This document shows, piece by piece, positions 1,023 to 20,813 of a DNA stretch of 21,593 nt. The position numbers and the translations under genes were made by a program. The notes under the pieces are model-generated. The model had not been told where the DNA came from and searched no databases. It saw only the letters and a program-made list of their open reading frames with translations. Numbering within the stretch: position 1 is the first letter of the stretch; each line of letters starts with the position of its first letter. The stretch lies in assembly GCF_006345805.1 (NCBI RefSeq), contig NW_021823675.1, positions 1 to 21,593 of the forward strand, read 5' to 3'. Source of the DNA: Octopus sinensis. Lineage: Eukaryota.

Positions 1023-1579
1023 GTGTTTTTCTTCTTCTTTCAAATTTGTTTCCATTTTTCGCCGAGTGTCTTCCCGACTCCTAGGGCAAAGAAACTCATA
1101 GTATACATTGGTAGGCCATCAAACTAAACTCACTAGTTCAATCATTTTTTTTTATAGAAATAAAGTTAAATTAAAATACATGGGTAGTAATAGTTCTCAC
1201 ATCGACAATGCTCTTCTCAATACGTGTGATGTACCAGTTAAGACAATCTTTTGCACTTCTTGCAGGGATGTAAGCCAGGGATCATTCTCATATAATTTTT
1301 CGTTCCCTTCTTGATCATTCCTAGTGCTCCTACGATCACTGGTATTGTAACCGCCTTGAGATGCCACATTTCTCAATTTCAATGAGCAGGTATTTATATT
1401 TTCTGAGCTTGTCAATTCTTTCGCCCGAGTATTATGATCACAGGGATGCTCATGTCGATCAATAAGCAAACTTTATTGTTTTTTGTCTTTCACAATATCC
1501 GGTTTATTGGCTTTGATGGTTCGGTCTGTATGTACTGGAAAGTCCCACAGAATCGTTACATTTTCTCCTCCAGCTACAC
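1023..1579 (-). mobile_element. 5'-truncated R4/Dong LINE, subfamily A (endonuclease C-terminus plus 3'UTR)
   Basis: Minus-strand frames give ILWDFPVHTDRTIKANKPDI ... LQEVQKIVLTGTSHVLRRALSM*, homologous to the C-terminus at 14824-15252. Frameshifted; followed by an (AAT)n tail. Confidence 0.9.
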
Positions 1580-1720
1580 TTCTTCTCTTCTTCTTCTTCT
1601 TCTTCTTCTTCTTCTTCTTCTTCTTCTTCTTTCTTCTTCTTCTTCTTCTTCTTCTTCTTCTTCTTCTTCTTCTTCTTCTTCTTCTTCTCTTCTTCTCTTC
1701 TCTTCTTCTTCTTCTTCTTA
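1580..1720. repeat. (TTC)n/(GAA)n microsatellite of about 140 bp
   Basis: Direct reading. Confidence 0.98.
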
Positions 1721-1761
1721 TTCTTATGATTATTATTATTATTATATATATTATTATTATT

Positions 1762-2089
1762 CGTAGTTTTATTTTTATAACGTGCTTTCACTTCACTACC
1801 AGCGCAGCTCTGTGTGCCTTGGGTATGTGCTGTGATTTGTTGTGATGCTCTGATGGTTACTGTATTGAAAGTGTTTCTGCGTAGGATGTGTGCAGTGCCT
1901 AGTATGCAATTTTCTGTATGTTATAATGTGTTTTGTAAGTCCTGGTGTTTTTGTTATTATTTGTCTGAATAATTTTTTATCATGCCTAAAGTACCTACTA
2001 TGATAGGAACTGTTTTCTGTTTTTAGATTCCACATTCTAGTTACCTCTATTTCTAGGTCTTTGTATTTTGAAAGTTTCCTCATTTCTTT
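1762..2089 (-). mobile_element. 5'-truncated R4/Dong LINE, subfamily B 3' end
   Basis: KLSKYKDLEIEVTRMWNLKTE...GTAHILRRTLSIQ* plus 3'UTR ending aaaactacg(AAT)n. (AAT)n lies on both sides; closely similar to 19537-19920. Confidence 0.92.
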
Positions 2090-2579
2090 ATTGTTATTAT
2101 TATTATTGTGTCCGGTTTTGGAGACTAGTTGTTCGGAGCTCTAAGTTTTCTTTAGAATTTCTTGTTCCAATGTCTGTTTTCAAAATTTTATTGACGACAG
2201 AACCCACGTCGCTGTAAGCGGGGCTAGCTGCGGTGGCCAGAATTAGCCCCTTAAAGGCGAATTTTGAGTTTTAAAAACTACAAATTAATATTTTAAAAAG
2301 AAAAAGTTCAGTATGGCTTCCCAAATCGAGGCAAGTAAAGGTTCTCTTACATCATCCGTTTTGACATTTTGTCACCTCCGCTTGTTAATGTTTTTGAGAA
2401 ACAAAGCAAAGACAGCAGCAGCACAGCAGTAGTAGTAGCAACAACAACAACAAAACAGCATCACACAACCATCAGCACAAACAACAAAAACATAACAGAA
2501 AAATGAAGAGGAGGCAGCAAGGAATCAACCCACTTTGACCCTAAAAAAAAGAAGACACACCACCAGAAATAGACGCTGA

Positions 2580-3240: not shown

Positions 3241-4374
3241 TAACATTGATATTTTTGCACCGTTGTTGCAATCATCTGAAATGGAACTGTCAAATCGCGA
3301 TATTCGAAAAATTTTGCTATTCAGCATCAAAAAAGGATGTAAACAGCTGAAACTGCTGACGATTTCAACGAAACATTTCATGAGGAAATAACCAGTGAGT
3401 GGTCAGCTAGAAAAGGGTTTAAACGATTTAGCAGTGGAAACCTGAAGATCATAAGCGTAGTGGTCCCCCGTCTGTCATCGATGACGGTCAATTGAAGACC
3501 GTCATTGAGAAAGACCCACGTAAAACCACTCGAGAAATGGCAAAGAACTTCAAGTTTGCCAGAAATGCCTGAAACCATTTGCATGCGATCGGAAATCAGA
3601 AAGCTCGACAAATGAGTACCACACGATTTGAATGAAAATCAGAAAATGTGAACTTATGAAGTGTGCTCGTCGCTTCTTCTGCTTTCTTCGCCGAAACCAG
3701 ACCGATCCATTTCTTGACCGTATTTGCGATGAAAAGTAGATTCTATATAATCATAAAAAATGTTTTTCGGAGTGGATGGACCCAAATGAAGCACCGAAAA
3801 GCTTCCCTAAACCCGATCTCTTCAAAAAAGAGATTATGGTGATTATTTAGTGATGTGCTGTTGGACTCATCGACTATAACTTATTAAAACCCCGAAAAAC
3901 CATTACTGCAGAATCATATTACCAAGAAATTGCCAAAATGAACGAAAAACTGCTACTCCTCTGTCTCAGACTGGTCAACAGAAGAGGCCCAATCATTCTT
4001 CATGACAATACTCAACCACACGTTTCACTAATGACGCTCCAGAGGTTTAGAGAATTTGGCTACGAAGTTCTTCCCTACTCAGCCTATTCCCAAGACCTTT
4101 CTCCCAACGACTACCACTTTTTCAAGTATCTTTATGGTTTCCTTCGAGAGGAGTTCAAAAATCAAACCGATGCTGAAAGCGCGTTCAAAGAGTCCATCAG
4201 CTCCAGAACTCCAGATTTTTATGTTAACGGAATAAACAAACTTTGTAACTCATTGGCAAAAATGTGTTTATAGTAATGGTACAGACTTTGATGAATAAAA
4301 TTTCCGCATTGCTGAAATACATTGTGATGAATTTCATGTTTCAAAACTTTGCTTACTTCTTACTCAGCCTGATA
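3241..4374 (+). mobile_element. Decayed mariner (DD34D) DNA transposon; 3' TIR present, 5' TIR missing
   Basis: ATG at 3281 (MELSNRDIRKILLF), *VPHDL (WVPHDL), CDEK*ILY, HDNTQPH, then 34 residues to YSQDLSPND. 3' TIR-like aaactttgcttacttcttactcagcctga plus TA at ~4344-4374. Many stops and frameshifts. Confidence 0.93.
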
Positions 4375-6464: not shown

Positions 6465-6725
6465 TATATATATAAATTCAACAACAATTGAGGAATGGCC
6501 TTAATAGGCCACTCGATCCACTAGAAATAGCAGCCAGGACTCAAACCGCCCAGTAGTAGTAATCAGAAATTAAAGGAAAATTAAAAAAGTTTTAAAATGT
6601 TTTTTTAAATTTTCGTTTAATTTCTGAATTACTACCACTTGGTGGTTTGAGTCCTGGCTGCTCTTTCTAGTTGGTCGAAGGCCTATTAAGGCCATTCCTC
6701 AATTGTTGTTGAATTTATATATATA
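6465..6725. repeat. Palindrome P1 (arms ~125 bp), tail-out, ending in (TA)n on both sides
   Basis: aattcaacaacaattgaggaatggccttaataggcc... versus ...ggcctattaaggccattcctcaattgttgttgaattt, with a few mismatches. Shares caattgagg and agaaatagcagc motifs with the P2/P3 ends. Confidence 0.95.
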
Positions 6726-6762
6726 ATATATTATAATATATATATATATAATATATATATAT

Positions 6763-7053
6763 ATTATATAAAAGGGCTTAGTAAAATAAATTACTTTGCC
6801 GCATACTGAACTCATTAGAAATAGCAGCTAAAAAAAACTTTTTTAAAACTATTTCTAATACTTAAAGAAAACCTCTCTCATATAGTGTTTGCTCAATTCA
6901 ACATTTTGCTCAATTTGAATTGAGCAAACACTATATGAGAGAGGTTTTCTTTAAGTATTAGAAATAGTTTTAAAAAAGTTTTTTTTAGCTGCTATTTCTA
7001 ATGAGTTCAGTATGCGGCAAAGTAATTTATTTTACTAAGCCCTTTTATATAAT
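6763..7053. repeat. Palindrome P2: 139-bp perfect arms, 13-nt loop; right arm extends to the element end at ~7143
   Basis: 6763-6901 is the exact reverse complement of 6915-7053 by manual comparison. It is a sequence variant of the 3' part of the 564-bp unit. Confidence 0.97.
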
Positions 7054-7122
7054 GTAATAATTTGAATTCGCCTTAAATGGTCCCTTTGCATACTGAATAC
7101 TTGGTGAAATTGATTAATTAAT

Positions 7123-7452
7123 TAATTTTACCCTCAATTGTTGAAATATATATATATATATATATCAACAATTGAGGGTAAAATTAATTAATTAATCAAT
7201 TTCACCAAGTGTTCAGTATGTAAAAGGACCATTTAATTTTACCCTCAATTGTTGAAATATATATATATATATATATATATCAACAATTGAGGGTAAAATT
7301 AATCAATTTCACCAAGTGTTCAGTATGTAAAAGGACCATTTAATTTTACCCTCAATTGTTGAAATATATATATATATATATATCAACAATTGAGGGTAAA
7401 ATTAATTAATTAATCAATTTCACCAAGTGTTCAGTATGTAAAAGGACCATTT
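7123..7452. repeat. Three tandem ~110-bp units, each a (TA)n-centred hairpin of element termini
   Basis: aattttaccctcaattgttga-aa(TA)n-tcaacaattgagggtaaaatt...aaaggaccattt, repeated three times. Confidence 0.95.
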
Positions 7453-7662
7453 AAGGCGAATTCAAAATTTTACATTATATAATTAGGGCTTAGTAAAATA
7501 AATTACTTTGCCACATACTGAACCTAGTAGAAATAGCAGCCAAAAAAAATTTTCTTAGCATTTCTACTACTTAAAGAAAATTTCTCTCAGATAATGTTTA
7601 CTCCAGACAGCCCACGAAGGTTTGGAGGTAAAGACAGAAAAATATCACAAGTACATAGATCG

Positions 7663-7725
7663 TTTGAGTACGTCAACGTTTCAAGATTAGCCAAATAAAA
7701 TCAGCATTTCTATCGTCAGCTCAAA
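7663..7725 (-). ncRNA. Type I hammerhead ribozyme, inverted copy
   Basis: Reverse complement of the motif at 8331-8393; predicted cleavage between 7669 and 7668. Confidence 0.78.
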
Positions 7726-8330
7726 ATTTCTTAATTTGGATTTGGAAACACTAAAAAGAAGGAAATTTACCTATCAGCGAACTTATCGCTTCCGATGAAC
7801 CACTCCAACTAAACAGTGTCAACAAATTCAAACGATCTATGTACTTGTGATATTTTTCTGTATTTACCTCCAAACCTTCGTGGGCTGTCTAGAGTAAACA
7901 TTATCTGAGAGAAATTTTCTTTAAGTAGTAGTAATGCTAAGAAAAAATTTTTTTGCTGCTATTTCTACTAAGTTCAGTATGTGGCAAAGTAATTTATTTT
8001 ACTAAGCCCTAATATATAATGTAAAATTTTGAATTCGCCTTAAATGGTCCTTTTACATACTGAACACTTGGTGAAATTGATTAATTAATTAATTTTACCC
8101 TCAATTGTTGATATTAATTCTTTTCTCTCGGTCATACTGCCTCGGTTCTCGCGGTTAAAATATAGTGTTTGCTAGATAGACCACGTGGGTGGAAGGGGAT
8201 TGAAGAAATTTACGCCTGCGCATTTTGAATTTGTTGACACTGTTTAGTTGGAGTGGTTCATCTGAAGCGATAAGTTCGCTGATAGGTAAAGTTCTTTCTT
8301 TTTAGTGTTTCCAAATCCAACTCAAGAAAT

Positions 8331-8393
8331 TTTGAGCTGACGATAGAAATGCTGATTTTATTTGGCTAATCTTGAAACGTTGACGTACTCAAA
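8331..8393 (+). ncRNA. Type I hammerhead ribozyme
   Basis: Stem I TTTGAG (8331-36)/CTCAAA (8388-93); core CTGACGA (8337-43); stem II AGA..TCT plus GCTGA/TTGGC; GAAA (8374-77); stem III ACG(T)-TG-(A)CGT; GUA cleavage triplet ending at 8387. The U-U at the base of stem II is non-canonical. Confidence 0.8.
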
Positions 8394-8894
8394 CGATCTA
8401 TGTACTTGTGATATTTTTCTGTATTTACCTCCAAACCTTCGTGGGCTGTCTGGAGTAAACATTATCTGAGAGAAATTTTCTTTAAGTAGTAGAAATGTTA
8501 AGAAAATTTTTTTTGGCTGCTATTTCTACTAAGTTCAGTATGTGGCAAAGTAATTTATTTTACTAAGCCCTAATTATATAATGTAAAATTTTGAATTCGC
8601 CTTAAATGGTCCTTTTACATACTGAACACTTGGTGAAATTGATTAATTAATTAATTTTACCCTCAATTGTTGATATTATAATTCATTTCTCTCGGTCATA
8701 CTGCCTCGGTTCTCGCGGTTAAAATATAGTGTTTGCTAGATAGACCACGTGGGTGGAAGGGGATTGAAGAAATTTACGCCTGCGCATTTTGAATTTGTTG
8801 ACACTGTTTAGTTGGAGTGGTTCATCTGAAGCGATAAGTTCGCTGATAGGTAAAGTTCCTTCTTTTTAGTGTTTCCAAATCCAACTTAAGAAAT

Positions 8895-8957
8895 TTTGAG
8901 CTGACGATAGAAATGCTGATTTTATTTGGCTAATCTTGAAACGTTGACGTACTCAAA
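8895..8957 (+). ncRNA. Type I hammerhead ribozyme, second direct copy
   Basis: Identical to 8331-8393; predicted cleavage after 8951. Confidence 0.8.
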
Positions 8958-9138
8958 CGATCTATGTACTTGTGATATTTTTCTGTATTTACCTCCAAAC
9001 CTTCGTGGGCTGTCTGGAGTAAACATTATCTGAGAGAAATTTTCTTTAAGTAGTAGAAATGCTAAGAAAATTTTTTTTTGGCTGCTATTCTACTAAGTTC
9101 AGTATGTGGCAAAGTAATTTATTTTACTAAGCCCTAAT

Positions 9139-9143
<5 letters not shown>

Positions 9144-9192
<49 letters not shown>
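9144..9192. repeat. (TA)n microsatellite
   Basis: Direct reading. Confidence 0.97.
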
Positions 9193-9244
9193 AATATTCA
9201 TGCGCATTCAGAGATCTACACACACATATAAATAGTGTAATCTC

Positions 9245-9720
9245 TTCTTTAATTCTTTTACTTGTTTGAGTCATTGGACTGCAGCCTTGCTGGAGTGCCA
9301 TCTCAAAAGCCGAAGAAATTTACATCTAGGTTTATTTTTTGTAAGACTGGTACATATTTTATTGAACGCTTTTGCCGAGCAGCTATGTTAAGGCGGGCGT
9401 AAAAGACCTGCTGTGAAACTATGAACGGGTAACAAACATAGTCACACAGACACACACACACACACACACACACACACGACACACACACACACTCACACAC
9501 AGACTCACGTACACACTCACGCACACACACACTCACACACACATATGTATATATATATATATAACGGACTTCCTTCGGGTCCGTCTACAATACCCACTCA
9601 CAAGTCTTTGCTCAGCCCGAGGCTATAGTAGAAGACACTTTCCCAGGTTGCCATGCAGGGAAACTAAACCTGGATCTATGTGCTTGCGGAGCAAGTTTCT
9701 TAACACATATACACGCCTAT
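9245..9720 (-). mobile_element. tRNA-head SINE family 1 with internal CA/TA microsatellite, diverged copy
   Basis: Reverse-complement homology to the clearer plus-strand copy at 13363-13740. Confidence 0.85.
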
Positions 9721-14585: not shown

Positions 14586-17500
14586 GTTTGACTTTTGCTT
14601 TATGTCTGTACAAGTTGGCTCCAAGTCTCACCCAGAGACCTCAAGAGACAACAGGTTGGAAGTTCTGTGCTATATATATTTGGGGTTTTTTTGGGTTTTT
14701 TGGTGTTGTACTAGTGAATGTCTAATACATAAAAATAAAATTCAAAAATAAATAAATAAATAAATAAAAAAAAATAAAAATAAAAAAAATTAAGTAAAAA
14801 AAAGTTTGTTTTAAACCTTGGGATTACATAGAGAGTATTTTGCGTAGGATATGAGCAGTTCCCATGAGCACTATCTTTTGAATTTCTGCCATTTTGGGGT
14901 TTCCTGGTATCTGAGTTAGGTAGCAATCAGTCCCTTTTGCTATCATTCCCAGGGCACCTATGACAACAGGTATTGTTTTAGTCTTCAGCTTCCACATTTT
15001 GCTGATTTCTATTTCAAGATCTTTATATTTGCTCAGTTTTTGGTAGGTCTTGACATATACGTTTATATCGATTGGAACAGTCATATCAATGAGGAGGCAT
15101 GTTCTTTGTCTGAAGTCTTTCAATATGATGTCTGGCCTATTTGCATCTATCTTCCTGTCAGTTTGAATGGTGAAGTTCCAGAGGAGTGAGATGTGGTCAT
15201 TTTCAAGCACTGGAGGTGGATTGTGTTCCCACCAGTTTTTGTCATGGGGCAAATCCAGGTTTTTGCAAATTACCCAGTGAATATATTGTGCAGCTCTATC
15301 ATGCCTGTTGAGGTACTCTGTAGGCGCTAGAAGACTGCATTTGGAGACAACATGATCAATGTTTCATTTTGTTGTCGGCATACACGACATGTTGGGCTAC
15401 TGCCGTTCTTTAATATGTTGGCCTGGTAGTTTCTTGTTGGTAGGCATTGATCTTGAGCTGCTATGATAAACCCTTCCGTTTCAGATTTTAAGCCAGAGGC
15501 CATTAGCCATTGATGGGTCAGGGCTTTGTCAATATCTGCATTATTCGCTCTCTTTGAGTATTTGCCATAGAAAGGTTTTTCTTGCCATTTATCATTCAGA
15601 ATATCTAAGGCCGCAGTTTTGGCACGGGTTTTCATGCGCCTAGCTTTTTCTGTGCTTGTTTCTTGTATGTCTATCTCTAATTCCGAAATTGGTTGTATCG
15701 GAATTCACTTAGATATTCCTTTGCCTGTTTTGTAACTGAGTATGATGCTTCTTGTTTTCATATTTTGAGACAAGTTTTAACATCCAGTCCTCAGAGTTTT
15801 CAGGTAGGTGTCTAGGCCAATTGTAGCAATCTTCATTGTTATTGCCAGTTGCAAAAGACCACGGCCTCTCCTCTTTTCTTGGCAGATAGAGTCGTTCTGT
15901 ATCTGCCTTAGGGTGGTGCATTCTATGCATTGTCAACAGTTTCCTTATTTTTCTGTCAAGATTACATATTTCAGTAATTGAACAGTTAACAATATTGAAA
16001 CTGTAAGTCACGACTGGTATGGCTAATGCATTGATCGCTTCGATCCTGTTTCTTGCATTCAGCTCTGTCTTGAGTATTGCTCTCACTCTTCGACAGCATT
16101 CTCTCCTGATCCTTTCCTTCATCTCTGAATGCCTTATTCCGTTCCCTTCAATTACCCCTAGGTATTGTAGCTCTCCGCTGGGTCTAGTTCTTTTATGACA
16201 TTCTGCTGGTCAAGGTTAACGTTAGATGTTTCTGTCATTTTTCCTTTGATAAAGGTAGCTTTTGCACATTTATCGAGGCTGAATTACATTCTGATGTCGT
16301 CACTGAATTGTTGACTATCGCTAGTAAGCCCTTGAGTTGTTGGTCATTTTTTTGCAAAAAGCTTTAAATCATCTATGTAAATGAGATGATTATATTTTTA
16401 TCAAACATTTTATACCCGTACTGCGCGTCATTGAGCAGCTTTGAGAGAGGCATTAAGGATAAACAAAAGAGGAGTGGTGACAGTGAGTCACCCTGGAAAA
16501 TGCCACACGAAATTTTTACATCCCAGCATTTAGGGATTCATTGTCACTGTTCAGAGTTAGTGTGGTTCTCCATGATCTCATACTTACACTCAAGAAGTTT
16601 CGCAGAGTAGGTGCTATCTATACATTTCCAGGCATTTCCTAATCCAGCTATGTGGTAGGCTATCAAAAGCCTTTTATAGTCTATCCAGGCTATTGATAAG
16701 TTTTGTGTCGTTGTGACAATCTTCTAAGATCATCTTATTGATGAGTAGCTGATCTTTACAACCATAGGATCCACGTTTACATCCTTTCTGTTCATTAGGG
16801 AATATGCTGCTGTCTGTCAAAAAAATTATAGGTATATTCCGTCAGGACAGATGTTAGTGTTTTATACATAGTTGTTAAACAGCTTATGGGTCTATAGTTT
16901 TTTGGTTCATTTGTTTCTTCACTTTTTGGAAGCAGGAATGTTAACCCATTAACTAGCCAAGGAGGCATCCTACTAGGGTGTGTGCAAAACATCATGTACA
17001 GTTACTGTTAGCAGTTCATGGCTCTCTGGGAAGGCATTAGCCAGAAGTTAGGAATTTTATCCTTTCCTGGAGACTTCCATTTGCTCGACCTCCTGAGAGC
17101 AGATCTTATATCTTCTACCTTGACACCCCCACTTTTGCTCTTCTAAGGGGTCCATTTCTGTAGATATTCTGTCAATCCAGGGGGCCTTTTCGTTGTATGT
17201 TTTTTCTTCTGCCCAGATTTTATTCTAAAATCTCTGCACTTCTTTTGATGGTACATACCTTGCAGTAAACGCTGTTTTTCCTATCTTCCTGTAAAAATTC
17301 TTGGTGTTATTTTTGAACATGTTGTTGTCCTTGTAAAATCTAACACGCTTTTCATACCTCGCTATGCGGGCAGCTTTGGCAGATACCTTTTGTTTGATGG
17401 TTTCTATGGTGGCATCAATATCAAGTATAGTTTTCATATTGTATTTTTTCAGTAATTTTGGGGGTTTTGTAGGTTTGGTAGTCTTGTGAGCCTTAAGGTT

Positions 17501-18716
17501 TTTCAAATATTCAATGTCAGATCTAAATATTTTAATTTGTTGTTGCAGACGCTCTTGCCAAGAAGGCTTTTTGTGGGAATGTTGCCGTTTTCTAATCTTT
17601 ACACCACATAGGATCGTTGAGATTTTCGCGGATGCACAGTATAGGTGGTTGAGGTTTGTGATCTCAACATCATTAGCTGAATTATATCCTTAAGTGCAAG
17701 CCGGATTTTACCAATTATTTTCATGTTTTGGTTAGAGTTGCGGTTTTAGGAAGTGTATCACGTCCATCCATGCTGGTTTCTTTATTTTCAGCATTCAATC
17801 ATGATTTGACTTTTTAGCTCATGTAGTCTGTTGGGTCAATATTTGTGTGACTTTCTTTATCTATTTGATGCTCATCTGTCTAGTGTTTATGATTGGTTCA
17901 GGGCGTATTTCACTTTGCCTATCACTTATACTAACTCTTTCAATCCTCACTTCGTTTTTATCAATTCTGGGCTGGTCTATAATTATTTCCTCTGTATTAT
18001 CTTCTCTAGCTGCAGCTTCGTTCATTTTATCCGATATTGCTTGTCTAACTTGATCAATTTTTTATAAGGTTTCTTCTGACGTTGGCAAGTTTGTTACTGT
18101 CTATGTAGGGTCTTACTTCAGGGTGTTTCTGTCTCCAGTTTAAGTATGCTTGTACAGTGTTAGATTTATCTGTGGGGAAATATATGGCATGGTAGAAGGC
18201 CTCAAGAACTTCTTTATTATCTTCCCTAGACCATTTTTCCTCTTTTTTCTTTTGATTATTTGGTGATGAGCATGGATAGCCATCTGTTGGAATATTCCGG
18301 TTGTGGGGTACGTCCAGCTCCTGTGTGTTTGGAAGATTTGATCCAGTAGCTGATTTTTCAATCAGAATTTGGTTCAATTTTCGGGTACGTGGTCTTTTGT
18401 AATCCGCGCAACGACCAATGCGGTTTATTGTTTGATTTGTTAACATTGAAGCACGACGAGCTTCCATTCTTATATTAGGAGATGGATCTGTCAGTTTAGG
18501 GTTCTCTACATGTAAGCATTGATCATAGCGCAGCTTCTTAAGACTAGCAGATCTATATTCGTCTGTATTTTTTTTTGTTGATAGTTTTATCTCCGAACAC
18601 TTTTTTTTCCTCCTCTTCCTTTCTTCAAGGCTCACTCTGCCTGTATTAGTTCGAAATAATGAGAATAAAATACGGAGAAGGAAAAGAAAAAAAGGGAAAA
18701 AGACGGGATCTTTCAG
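14586..18716 (-). mobile_element. Full-length (~4.1 kb) inactivated R4/Dong-clade non-LTR retrotransposon, subfamily D
   Basis: Single broken ORF with RT and restriction-like endonuclease, 3'UTR 14586-14823, (AAT)n at the 3' end and degenerate (AAT)n at the 5' end. Dong elements are established (TAA)n-specific R4-clade LINEs. Confidence 0.95.
14824..18635 (-). pseudogene. Disrupted Dong polyprotein: N-terminal Myb-like motif, RT, CCHC finger, PD-(D/E)xK endonuclease
   Basis: KWSREDNKEVLEAFY; LLPKSEETNEPKNYRPISCL; GIFQGDSLSPLLF (~16470-16505); HLIYIDDLK (~16360-16390); CRVC; NRPDIILKD..IDM..KYKDL. Multiple frameshifts and stops. Confidence 0.95.
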
Positions 18717-18800
18717 TTATTATTGTTATTACTATCACCTTCACCACAATCACCATCATCAGCAACATCACCATCACCATCATCATCATCAATGACATTG
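18717..18800. repeat. Degenerate (TTA)/(ATC)/(CAC) triplet tract
   Basis: Direct reading. Confidence 0.85.
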
Positions 18801-19424: not shown

Positions 19425-19425
<1 letters not shown>

Positions 19426-19490
<65 letters not shown>

Positions 19491-19492
19491 TA

Positions 19493-19523
<31 letters not shown>

Positions 19524-19530
19524 CATTATT
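19426..19530. repeat. (ATT)n microsatellite
   Basis: Direct reading. Confidence 0.97.
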
Positions 19531-19980: not shown

Positions 19981-19982
19981 TT

Positions 19983-19984
19983 AC

Positions 19985-20032
<48 letters not shown>

Positions 20033-20066
20033 TACTACTACTACTACTATTATTATTATTATTATT

Positions 20067-20146
<80 letters not shown>

Positions 20147-20576: not shown

Positions 20577-20643
<67 letters not shown>

Positions 20644-20650
20644 ATATTAT

Positions 20651-20683
<33 letters not shown>

Positions 20684-20773
20684 TGTTATATTTCGGAATG
20701 GTCATATTGCCAGTTTAGTCAAATATTTAAACGTATATATATATATATATATATATGTATGGATGGATGGAAG

Positions 20774-20813
<40 letters not shown>
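20575..20813. repeat. Interrupted (TA)n tracts
   Basis: Direct reading. Confidence 0.92.

What the first reader, a model, noticed from the sequence alone, without database searches (positions are those of the whole stretch)
7828..9143. Tandem ~564-bp repeat with a complete hammerhead ribozyme in every unit (retrozyme-like array)
Seen: direct repeats, each with all three hammerhead helices and the conserved core (CUGACGA, GAAA, GUA^). Predicted cleavage sites at 8387 and 8951 are 564 nt apart, and there is no ORF. Established: Penelope-like pLTRs carry type I hammerheads with short palindromic stem III, and animal retrozymes are non-coding hammerhead tandem repeats processed into monomeric linear and circular RNAs. 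Inference: this is a non-autonomous ribozyme retroelement whose transcripts self-process to a 564-nt, possibly circular, RNA. That is longer than the animal retrozyme units I recall, and I do not recognise it as a described cephalopod family.
Basis: partly seen in the sequence, partly recalled or inferred. Interest (0 to 1): 0.92.

Follow-up and report, generated by a model that had tools for sequence, protein, structure and literature searches.

The report
Octopus hammerhead-bearing tandem repeat (retrozyme-like)
A non-coding 564-bp repeat in an octopus genome carries a plausible but atypical self-cutting hammerhead RNA motif in each copy and looks like one more family of the known "retrozyme" mobile elements, so it is a modest extension of known biology and not a new kind of element.

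Summary
The repeat is real: 2.35 head-to-tail copies of a 564-bp non-coding unit at 7828-9149, 98% identical. There are three hammerhead-like motifs, not two. All invariant core nucleotides are present (CUGACGA, GAAA, GUA^C). Helix I has 6 bp and helix III has 3 bp. Helix II is atypical: a U.U at 10.1-11.1 instead of G-C, 3 bp, then a 22-nt insertion. No Rfam hammerhead model matches, and a model built from four validated retrozyme hammerheads scores at noise level. A descriptor scan puts chance at about 1e-5 per unit. Supporting evidence: a validated axolotl retrozyme hammerhead also has U.U plus 3 bp and a GUA site; the hammerhead strand folds far better than shuffles (z about -5.5 against -2 for the other strand); two compensatory pair changes separate the subfamilies; the direct array starts 1-6 nt from the predicted cleavage site; and the layout matches Penelope-like insertions (partial tandem, inverted 5'-truncated copy, (TA)n flanks). 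The host is an Octopus-like genome. I could retrieve no other genomic copies and no RNA data. Verdict: probably a new octopod family of non-LTR retrozymes; catalysis is unproven. The 564-nt size lies within the published range of 51-972 bp.

The parts
7828..8387 (+). Repeat copy 1 (unit positions 2-564); its 5' end lies 1-6 nt from the predicted cleavage site
   Evidence: blastn of the unit against the window, 97.9% identity; the repeat finder D1 and D3
8388..8951 (+). Repeat copy 2, the reference 564-nt unit running from one predicted cleavage site to the next
   Evidence: The + strand RNA has MFE -152.1 kcal/mol, z -5.3 to -5.5
8952..9149 (+). Partial copy 3 (unit 1-198), ending in the TA-rich stretch ATTATATAAT that runs into (TA)n
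8325..8399 (+). Hammerhead-like motif 1. Stem I 8331-8336/8388-8393 plus a distal 3 bp; core CUGACGA 8337-8343; helix II region 8344-8373; GAAA 8374-8377; helix III 8377-8386; predicted cleavage after A8387
   Evidence: read from the sequence; descriptor hit; helix II and helix III also appear in free folds, and two copies cofold into a dimeric hammerhead
8889..8963 (+). Hammerhead-like motif 2, identical in sequence to motif 1; predicted cleavage after A8951
7375..7832 (-). Inverted partial tandem (unit 401-564 followed by 1-293 on the minus strand), 5'-truncated, head-to-head with copy 1
   Evidence: the repeat finder I1 and I2; blastn
7657..7731 (-). Hammerhead-like motif 3, on the minus strand inside the inverted copy (CUGACGA starts at 7719; predicted cleavage between 7669 and 7668)
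   Evidence: descriptor hit; sequence identical to motifs 1 and 2
7828..7832 (.). Head-to-head junction with 5-nt microhomology (TCAAA) shared by the inverted arm (unit 401-405) and the direct arm (unit 2-6)
9139..9197 (.). (TA)n microsatellite flanking the 3' end of the direct array
   Evidence: TRF; sequence
7364..7383 (.). (AT)n tract flanking the 3' end (unit 293) of the inverted copy
   Evidence: sequence
6760..7152 (.). Older subfamily copy (86-89% identical to the unit) arranged as a near-perfect palindrome. The minus arm covers unit 198 to 59, then a 13-nt spacer, then the plus arm covers unit 59 to 293. It is flanked by (TA)n at 6716-6770 and 7146-7170
   Evidence: the repeat finder I4, 142-nt arms 99% complementary; blastn; alignment
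7122..7454 (.). Three tandem modules of about 109 bp, each a foldback of unit 264-293 and unit 293-215 around (AT)n
   Evidence: TRF period 107-111

Best explanation
This is a member of a non-coding, hammerhead-bearing tandem-repeat retroelement family: a metazoan 'non-LTR retrozyme', that is, a non-autonomous derivative or passenger of Penelope-like elements, in an octopod genome.

Shown here: a 564-bp AT-rich unit without coding capacity is present as a 2.35-copy head-to-tail array. An inverted, 5'-truncated 0.8-copy lies directly upstream, and both outer ends run into (TA)n. Each unit junction carries a type I hammerhead-like motif with a complete catalytic core. The strand that carries the motif has an unusually stable, strand-specific RNA fold.

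Inferred mechanism: the + strand is transcribed as a multimer. The hammerhead, probably working best as a dimer through the 10-nt quasi-palindromic helix III (ACGUUGACGU), cuts after GUA to release 564-nt monomers with 5'-OH and 2',3'-cyclic phosphate ends. A host RtcB-type ligase may circularise these monomers. A Penelope-like RT/GIY-YIG enzyme nicks both strands of an AT-rich target, here a (TA)n microsatellite, and copies the RNA from both nicks, priming at the unit's own TA-rich stretches (unit 198 and 293). The two cDNAs meet head to head. The direct one ran to the ribozyme-generated 5' end of the RNA.

The hammerhead is atypical (U.U in place of G10.1-C11.1, and an expanded helix II), so its activity may be low or lost in these copies.
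For: Hammerhead motif. The core is complete: C3 U4 G5 A6 N7 G8 A9, G12 A13 A14, A15.1-U16.1 and H17=A. Helix I has 6 bp followed by an internal loop and a 3-bp closing stem, and helix III has 3 bp plus a tetraloop. A descriptor with these relaxed requirements hits nowhere else in the window. It is expected 3e-4 to 1e-3 times per window and 8e-6 to 3e-5 times per unit. It meets the field's catalytic-centre criterion CUGANGA / GAAAY / RUH (supplement of PMC7229834).

Precedent. The validated axolotl retrozyme Ax353 (HHR_Amex2) reads CUGAUGA-U-GCC..GGC-U-GAAAC..GUA. It has the same U.U base, 3-bp helix II and GUA site, and it self-cleaves at 22% per hour as a monomer and better as a dimer. Two copies of the motif cofold into a dimeric hammerhead at -30.6 kcal/mol, against 2 x -10.9 for separate monomers.

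RNA structure. The + strand gives z -5.3 to -6.0 and the minus strand -2.0 to -2.6, while eight control windows range from +0.6 to -3.5. The + strand MFE has 25 G.U pairs and the minus strand has 4; 63% of nucleotides are paired. Against the 86-89% subfamily copy, 2 compensatory and 4 one-sided changes keep pairs; 3 pairs break, 2 of them at the (TA)n boundary.

Insertion signature. The direct array starts at unit 2-6, within 6 nt of the predicted cleavage site, which has a chance of about 1-2%. PLE insertions are described as partial tandems with an adjacent inverted 5'-truncated copy and a bias for microsatellites (PMC8557442). A PLE enzyme cleaves AT-rich DNA and extends both strands (PMC11167929). 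Unit GC is 33.7% and there is no ORF, as in metazoan retrozymes. Penelope families are annotated in Octopus vulgaris (PMC13282606), and the window is octopod.
Against: No Rfam hammerhead model matches, even at E<=10 on the 96-nt motif alone. A covariance model built from four experimentally validated retrozyme hammerheads scores the sites at 9.3 bits, E about 1, below an unrelated hit in the window.

The G10.1-C11.1 pair, described as highly conserved in canonical and PLE hammerheads (PMC4209133), is absent. Helix II is weak and AU-rich with a 3x3 internal loop. The hammerhead secondary structure (-9.8 kcal/mol) is less stable than a competing local fold (-14.5 kcal/mol).

The three motif copies are identical, so the motif itself shows no covariation. 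Zero substitutions in the motif is not significant, because only 1.4 are expected.

I could retrieve no other genomic copies, no transcripts and no autonomous PLE with a matching pLTR. The window contains no PLE ORF. At genome scale the descriptor would give tens of chance hits. Recurrent breakpoints at TA-rich sites could also arise from DNA-level rearrangement at (TA)n.
Confidence: 0.62

Rival explanations
1. This is an ordinary AT-rich satellite or foldback repeat that grew and rearranged at the DNA level: (TA)n expansion at internal TA-rich seeds, hairpin or template-switch inversions, and unequal crossing-over. The hammerhead-like motif is then a chance match with no ribozyme function.
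For: No covariance model recognises the motif. Helix II lacks G10.1-C11.1. All but one of the breakpoints sit at (TA)n tracts, which are self-complementary and prone to foldback. The cluster holds a 99% perfect palindrome and a triplicated foldback module of about 109 bp. Tens of chance descriptor hits are expected per 2.5-Gb genome.
Against: The chance of a hit inside one 564-bp unit is about 1e-5. The motif lies on the strand with the exceptional, G.U-rich fold. The head-to-head junction at 7828-7832 is not at a (TA)n tract and falls within 6 nt of the predicted cleavage site. The 6-bp helix I and the four-position helix II match canonical type I hammerheads. A validated axolotl hammerhead shares the U.U feature.
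Confidence: 0.2
2. The unit is not a dedicated non-autonomous family. It is the pseudo-LTR (terminal non-coding region) of an autonomous Penelope-like element, present here as an ORF-less solo-pLTR array after deletion or extreme 5' truncation.
For: The hammerhead position, the tandem-plus-inverted architecture and the AT-rich target are the PLE signature. Retrozyme consensus sequences in Xenopus are sister to PLE pLTRs. Octopus genomes hold Penelope families.
Against: There is no RT or GIY-YIG remnant in the unit or anywhere in the window; the only RT is LINE-like. Complete unit-length periodicity of 564 bp across three junctions fits a self-contained unit. The unit's strongly structured RNA resembles retrozyme circRNAs.
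Confidence: 0.13
3. The array or its inverted junction is an assembly artefact, such as a collapsed or chimeric repeat or a palindromic long-read artefact.
For: Near-perfect palindromes and head-to-head junctions can be produced by some long-read library artefacts. Repeat arrays are often mis-assembled.
Against: The copies differ by 1-2% at scattered private positions. A second, diverged subfamily copy lies next to the array. The arrangement matches a documented biological pattern. This cannot be tested here.
Confidence: 0.05

Closest known systems
Metazoan non-LTR retrozymes (Cervera & de la Pena 2020, PMC7229834), especially axolotl Rtz Ax353 / HHR_Amex2 and mussel Mg353
   Same: Head-to-tail non-coding repeats with low GC and one type I hammerhead per unit. 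Helix I has 6 bp, helix III is short with a tetraloop, and the RNA of hammerhead polarity is highly self-paired. Ax353 also has a U.U at the base of helix II followed by 3 bp, and a GUA cleavage triplet.
   Different: There is no sequence homology to the mussel or coral retrozymes. Helix II carries a 22-nt insertion instead of a 5-7-nt loop. The unit (564 bp) is longer than the 150-450 bp of that paper, though inside the 51-972 bp range of the 2026 preprint. Only 2.35 + 0.8 copies are seen here. Expression, cleavage and circles are untested. No cephalopod example was found in the searchable literature.
Penelope-like element pseudo-LTRs and their insertion architecture (PMC8557442, PMC4209133, PMC11167929)
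   Same: A hammerhead in a terminal repeat, a partial tandem with an adjacent inverted 5'-truncated copy, an AT-rich or microsatellite target, a quasi-palindromic helix III that permits a dimeric ribozyme, and a longer-than-usual helix II in some PLE hammerheads.
   Different: There is no RT/GIY-YIG ORF. PLE minimal hammerheads usually keep G10.1-C11.1 and have a shorter helix I (4-5 bp) and a minimal helix III, whereas this motif has a 6-bp helix I and a 3-bp helix III, closer to canonical retrozyme motifs.
Classical hammerhead satellites (newt satellite 2; Schistosoma Sm-alpha), as summarised in PMC7229834 and PMC4209133
   Same: Tandem genomic repeats transcribed into self-cleaving monomer-length RNAs, with a type I hammerhead and dimer-dependent activity when helix III is weak.
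   Different: Those motifs match the Rfam hammerhead type I family (my recollection); this one matches no Rfam model. Those arrays are much larger.
Plant LTR retrozymes (PMC4918200)
   Same: Non-autonomous, non-coding elements with hammerhead-delimited RNA of 600-1000 nt that circularises.
   Different: Plant elements have type III hammerheads inside true LTRs, PBS and PPT motifs, GC above 55%, and are mobilised by Ty3/Gypsy. None of these features is present here.

Membership tests
Hammerhead ribozyme (type I) | Invariant catalytic core CUGANGA ... GAAA ... UH in the correct order and register | tested here: met
   CUGACGA at 8337-8343, GAAA at 8374-8377 and U8386-A8387 followed by C8388. The same holds at +564 nt and on the minus strand at 7719-7669.
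Hammerhead ribozyme (type I) | Helices I and III flank the core and helix I is open-ended | tested here: met
   Helix I is UUUGAG/CUCAAA (6 bp) plus a distal 3 bp. Helix III is ACG-UUGA-CGU (3 bp).
Hammerhead ribozyme (type I) | Regular helix II closed by the conserved G10.1-C11.1 pair | tested here: not met
   Positions 10.1 and 11.1 are U.U. They are followed by AGA/UCU (3 bp), a 3x3 internal loop and a 5-bp extension containing 2 G.U pairs. The same U.U occurs in the active axolotl HHR_Amex2.
Hammerhead ribozyme (type I) | Match to curated covariance models (the Rfam hammerhead families) | tested here: not met
   No hammerhead hit at the gathering score, at E<=10 on 2.6 kb, or at E<=10 on 96 nt. 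My own model from four validated retrozyme hammerheads gives 9.3 bits, E about 1.
Hammerhead ribozyme (type I) | Core conservation and stem covariation across homologous copies | tested here: inconclusive
   The three copies are identical in the motif; 0 substitutions against 1.4 expected is not significant. The diverged subfamily copy lacks the motif region. No other copies could be retrieved.
Hammerhead ribozyme (type I) | Site-specific Mg2+-dependent self-cleavage | not testable with these tools
   This needs in vitro transcription of monomer and dimer constructs.
Metazoan non-LTR retrozyme | Head-to-tail repeats of a few hundred bp, each with a type I hammerhead, and no LTR, PBS or PPT | tested here: met
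   2.35 direct units with 561- and 564-bp spacing, and a hammerhead-like motif at every unit junction. Whether the motif is a true hammerhead is qualified in the rows above.
Metazoan non-LTR retrozyme | Non-coding and low GC (below 45-50%) | tested here: met
   The longest ORF is 35 aa and the longest open frame is 53 aa. No homologue was found for that frame. GC is 33.7%.
Metazoan non-LTR retrozyme | RNA of hammerhead polarity predicted to be stable and highly self-paired | tested here: met
   The + strand has z -5.3 to -6.0 with 63% of nucleotides paired and 25 G.U pairs. The minus strand has z -2.0 to -2.6. Controls range from +0.6 to -3.5. There are 2 compensatory changes against the subfamily copy.
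Metazoan non-LTR retrozyme | Expressed as monomer-length linear and circular RNAs | not testable with these tools
   No transcriptome data were reachable.
Metazoan non-LTR retrozyme | Multi-copy, dispersed family in a genome that also holds PLEs | tested here: inconclusive
Penelope families are reported for O. vulgaris, and the window is octopod.
Penelope-like element (autonomous) | ORF encoding a telomerase-like RT plus a GIY-YIG endonuclease | tested here: not met
   There is no such ORF in the unit or among the window ORFs and long open frames scanned. The only RT (about 14.7-18.7 kb, minus strand) is a degraded LINE-type RVT_1.
Penelope-like element (insertion signature) | Partial tandem with an adjacent inverted 5'-truncated copy, in an AT-rich or microsatellite target | tested here: met
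   The layout is (AT)n 7364-7383, then the inverted copy 7375-7832, then the direct array 7828-9149, then (TA)n 9139-9197. The pattern is as drawn in Fig. 2 of PMC8557442 and fits two-strand extension in PMC11167929.

The most novel reading that the evidence does not exclude
This is an active octopod retrozyme family whose hammerhead tolerates a U.U at 10.1-11.1 and a 22-nt expansion of helix II, and which yields a 564-nt circular RNA. Its insertion scar would be direct genomic evidence that Penelope-like enzymes mobilise retrozyme RNAs after ribozyme processing: two cDNAs primed from both strands of a (TA)n target, one of them ending at the ribozyme-made 5' end. So far that link has been inferred only from co-occurrence and pLTR homology.
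Probability: 0.35. Interest if true: 0.55.

Novelty: new member of a known kind. Interest (0 to 1): 0.4.

Why it matters
If confirmed, it would extend hammerhead retrozymes to cephalopods. Their genomes are rich in repeats and in Penelope elements, but I found no retrozyme described for them in the searchable literature. It would also add a hammerhead variant that current covariance models miss, which suggests that retrozyme censuses based on Rfam undercount such families. The insertion architecture at this locus is a concrete, testable clue to how retrozymes are copied into DNA. It does not open a new category: tandem hammerhead repeats, their circular RNAs and their link to Penelope-like elements are all established.

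Tried and rejected
1. Rfam cmscan was run at the gathering score on the whole window, at E<=10 on 6800-9400 and at E<=10 on 8315-8410. It gave no hammerhead or other ribozyme family. The only hits were microRNA-like matches to the AT-rich palindromes at 6856-7409, far below their gathering scores, and I read them as hairpin artefacts.

2. A covariance model built from the four validated retrozyme hammerheads in the supplement of PMC7229834 aligns the candidate end to end in the hammerhead register. The score is only 9.3 bits, E about 1. The model is dominated by the stem sequences of its four members, so this is a weak test, and it gives no support.

3. I tried to fish for other copies through small ORFs. 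A 53-aa open frame across the cleavage site found no candidates in the 5.8-billion-protein collection.

4. The look-up of encoding contigs with two window ORFs found nothing on record.

5. Exact 22-mer and 24-mer scans of the metagenome and genome (bacterial/archaeal) collections, and a 22-mer scan of the viral collection, gave no matches. These collections are unlikely to hold octopus DNA, so the result says nothing about copy number.

6. ARAGORN found no tRNA-like part, so there is no support for a tRNA-derived SINE.

7. Pfam scans of window ORFs and long open frames found no GIY-YIG or PLE RT. They found only a weak RVT_1 match in a degraded LINE and a weak mariner Transposase_1 match.

8. 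blastn against the mussel and coral retrozyme sequences showed no homology.

9. I compared substitutions among the three motif-bearing copies. There are too few differences to be informative.

10. An alternative helix II register, with the U after A9 bulged as in PLE hammerheads, gives only A-U plus G.U. I rejected it in favour of the register with U.U plus 3 bp.
Full report
**What is in the sequence.** The window is animal DNA. It is AT-rich (26-41% GC), full of microsatellites, and contains a mariner-like fragment and a degraded LINE. A LINE-derived ORF at 14824-15252 (minus strand) is 80-91% identical to many Octopus bimaculoides proteins and at most 65% identical to anything else, so the host is an octopod.

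At the reported coordinates there is a true head-to-tail repeat. Taking the unit from one predicted cleavage site to the next (8388-8951, 564 nt), blastn gives three direct pieces:
- 7828-8387 = unit 2-564 (97.9% identical)
- 8388-8951 = unit 1-564
- 8952-9149 = unit 1-198, after which the sequence runs into (TA)n at 9139-9197

TRF missed the repeat because its longest period is 500. The unit has no ORF above 35 aa. The longest stop-to-stop frame is 53 aa and has no relative in the protein collection.

The array is one part of a 2.4-kb cluster of the same family in both orientations.
- Directly upstream, on the minus strand, lies a partial tandem covering unit 401-564 followed by unit 1-293 (7832 down to 7375). 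It contains a third complete hammerhead-like motif.
- Its 5' end meets the 5' end of the direct array head to head at 7828-7832, where 5 nt (TCAAA) are shared by both arms. Its 3' end (unit 293) runs into (AT)n at 7364-7383.
- Further left there are three foldback modules of about 109 bp around (AT)n (7122-7454).
- There is also an older copy, 86-89% identical to the unit, arranged as a 99% perfect palindrome: minus arm unit 198 to 59, a 13-nt spacer, then plus arm unit 59 to 293 (6760-7152). It too is bounded by (TA)n.
- The 3' boundaries at unit 198 (ATTATATAAT) and unit 293 (GATATTA) recur in both the young and the old insertion.

**The hammerhead-like motif.** Read directly from the sequence, the motif is: UUUGAG (8331-8336), CUGACGA (8337-8343), a 30-nt helix II region (8344-8373), GAAA (8374-8377), helix III ACG-UUGA-CGU (8377-8386), A17 (8387), then the predicted cleavage site and CUCAAA (8388-8393).
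- Every invariant core position is present.
- Helix I has 6 bp, followed by a 3x3 internal loop and a 3-bp closing stem.
- Helix III has 3 bp and a tetraloop.
- Helix II is the weak point. Positions 10.1 and 11.1 are U.U, not the G-C described as highly conserved in canonical and PLE hammerheads (PMC4209133). It is followed by AGA/UCU, a 3x3 internal loop, and a 5-bp extension with two G.U pairs.

Helix I of 6 bp and a helix II of four positions before the loop match the dimensions given for canonical metazoan type I motifs. The motif also meets the catalytic-centre criterion used by the field, CUGANGA / GAAAY / RUH.

**Tests of the motif.**

Against it:
- No Rfam hammerhead family is hit at the gathering score, at E<=10 on 2.6 kb, or at E<=10 on the 96-nt motif alone.
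- A covariance model I built from the four experimentally validated retrozyme hammerheads printed in the supplement of PMC7229834 aligns the sites in the hammerhead register. The score is only 9.3 bits (E about 1), below an unrelated hit.
- The hammerhead secondary structure (-9.8 kcal/mol) is less stable than a competing local fold (-14.5 kcal/mol) that sequesters the 5' strand of helix I.

For it:
- A permissive descriptor requires helix I of at least 5 bp, CUGANGA, helix II of at least 3 bp with one closing mismatch allowed, GAAA, helix III of at least 3 bp, and UH. It finds only these three sites in both strands of the window.
- In 0.6 Gb each of first-order Markov sequence trained on the window or on the unit, hits with helix I of at least 6 bp occur 4 and 16 times. 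That is 3e-4 to 1e-3 per window and 8e-6 to 3e-5 per unit, but also some tens per 2.5-Gb genome.
- The axolotl retrozyme Ax353 hammerhead (HHR_Amex2) has the same unusual features: a U.U at the base of helix II, 3 bp, and a GUA site. It cleaves at 22% per hour as a monomer and much better as a dimer.
- Two copies of the octopus motif cofold spontaneously into a dimeric hammerhead through a 10-bp helix III, ACGUUGACGU paired with itself including two central G.U pairs. The energy is -30.6 kcal/mol against -21.8 for two separate monomers.

The three copies are identical across the motif. With only about 10 substitutions in 460 shared nucleotides, this is not informative.

**Independent evidence about the RNA.**
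- The 564-nt + strand, which is the hammerhead strand, folds to -152.1 kcal/mol with z about -5.3 to -6.0. The minus strand gives -103.6 kcal/mol with z about -2.0 to -2.6. Eight control windows of the same length range from +0.6 to -3.5, and their strand differences are at most about 1.6 z-units.
- The + strand fold has 25 G.U pairs against 4 on the minus strand, and 63% of nucleotides are paired in a long quasi-rod with side branches.
- I compared the unit with the diverged subfamily copy over unit 59-296. Of 60 predicted pairs, 51 are unchanged, 2 change on both sides and stay paired (G-C to U-A at 102-142; U-A to C-G at 156-230), 4 change on one side and stay paired through G.U, and 3 break. 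Two of the three broken pairs lie where the old copy runs into (TA)n.

With one comparator this is modest evidence. It does point to selection on a + strand RNA structure, as described for retrozyme circular RNAs.

**Evidence from the insertion scar.** The direct array begins at unit position 2. With the 5-nt microhomology, the true start is somewhere in unit 2-6, that is, within 6 nt of the predicted cleavage site. For a random breakpoint in a 564-nt unit the chance is about 1-2%. This is what a cDNA copied to the 5' end of a ribozyme-processed RNA would leave.

The overall layout is a partial tandem with an inverted 5'-truncated copy adjacent upstream and microsatellite flanks. That is the arrangement drawn for Penelope-like elements (PMC8557442, Fig. 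2 and abstract). It also fits the finding that a purified PLE enzyme cuts AT-rich DNA and extends both strands (PMC11167929). Recurrent 3' ends at the unit's own TA-rich stretches suggest priming by microhomology with the (TA)n target.

This part is inference. DNA-level foldback and recombination at self-complementary (TA)n tracts could produce the (TA)n-associated breakpoints. It would not explain the head-to-head junction at 7828-7832, which does not lie at a (TA)n tract.

**Comparison with known families.** The closest known kind is the metazoan non-LTR retrozyme: AT-rich, non-coding tandem repeats with a type I hammerhead, expressed as linear and circular monomers, and thought to be mobilised by PLEs (PMC7229834; PMC7761336; bioRxiv 10.64898/2026.07.22.740005).
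- The 564-nt unit is longer than the 150-450 bp of the 2020 paper. It is inside the 51-972 bp range of the 2026 survey, in which 75% of families have at most seven units. Neither the length nor the short array is anomalous.
- There is no sequence homology to the mussel or coral elements.
- There is no PLE ORF in the window.
- Penelope families are annotated in O. vulgaris.
- Papers mentioning hammerhead ribozymes or retrozymes together with octopus or cephalopods describe no such element there. An octopod family would therefore be new as a member, not as a kind.

**Verdict.** It rests on anatomy, statistics and analogy. No covariance model supports the ribozyme, and no other copies, transcripts or cleavage data could be obtained. 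The main rival, a DNA-level satellite with a chance motif, gets about 0.2. I rate it as a new member of a known kind with moderate interest (0.4). The most useful follow-ups are a genome-wide census of the family and its hammerhead covariation, a search for a PLE with matching termini, and a cleavage and circular-RNA assay.

Noticed in passing
window 14700-18720 (minus strand): A degraded LINE-type retrotransposon with many stops and frameshifts. RT motifs are visible (FQGDSLSPLLF, YIDDLKLF), with a weak Pfam RVT_1 match. Its C-terminal ORF is 80-91% identical to many Octopus bimaculoides 'uncharacterized proteins'. It is not a Penelope-like element.
   Followed up: partly
window 1197-2140 (minus strand): A second fragment of the same LINE family's 3' end. 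The ORFs contain KYKDLEIEVTRMWNLKT and KIVLTGTSHVLRRALSM, paralleling 14824-15252.
   Followed up: no
window 3854-4270 (+): A mariner/Tc1-like transposase remnant (HDNTQPH...DLSPNDYHFF), with a weak Pfam Transposase_1 match at E 3e-4, below the cut-off.
   Followed up: partly
protein P0032: A UniRef entry labelled Escherichia coli (UPI00321971E2, 97 aa) is 85% identical to this octopus LINE ORF. This is most likely contamination or mislabelling in the source record.
   Followed up: no
window 6513-6678: An imperfect inverted repeat (76-nt arms, 76% complementary, 14-nt spacer) lies just left of the repeat cluster and may be a MITE-like element. At 6690-6712 a short CCTCAATTGTTG fragment of the unit precedes the (TA)n tract.
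   Followed up: no
window 6856-7409: Many sub-threshold Rfam microRNA-precursor hits (MIR6135, MIR1120, mir-154 and others; 30-48 bits against gathering scores of 52-99) fall on the AT-rich palindromes of the cluster. I read them as hairpin artefacts, not microRNA genes.
   Followed up: partly
window 1579-1725, 19425-19530, 19981-20146, 9443-9543, 20587-20813: Long microsatellites: (CTT)50, (TTA)36, (TTA)55, (CA)50 and (AT)113. The window is unusually dense in simple repeats.
   Followed up: no
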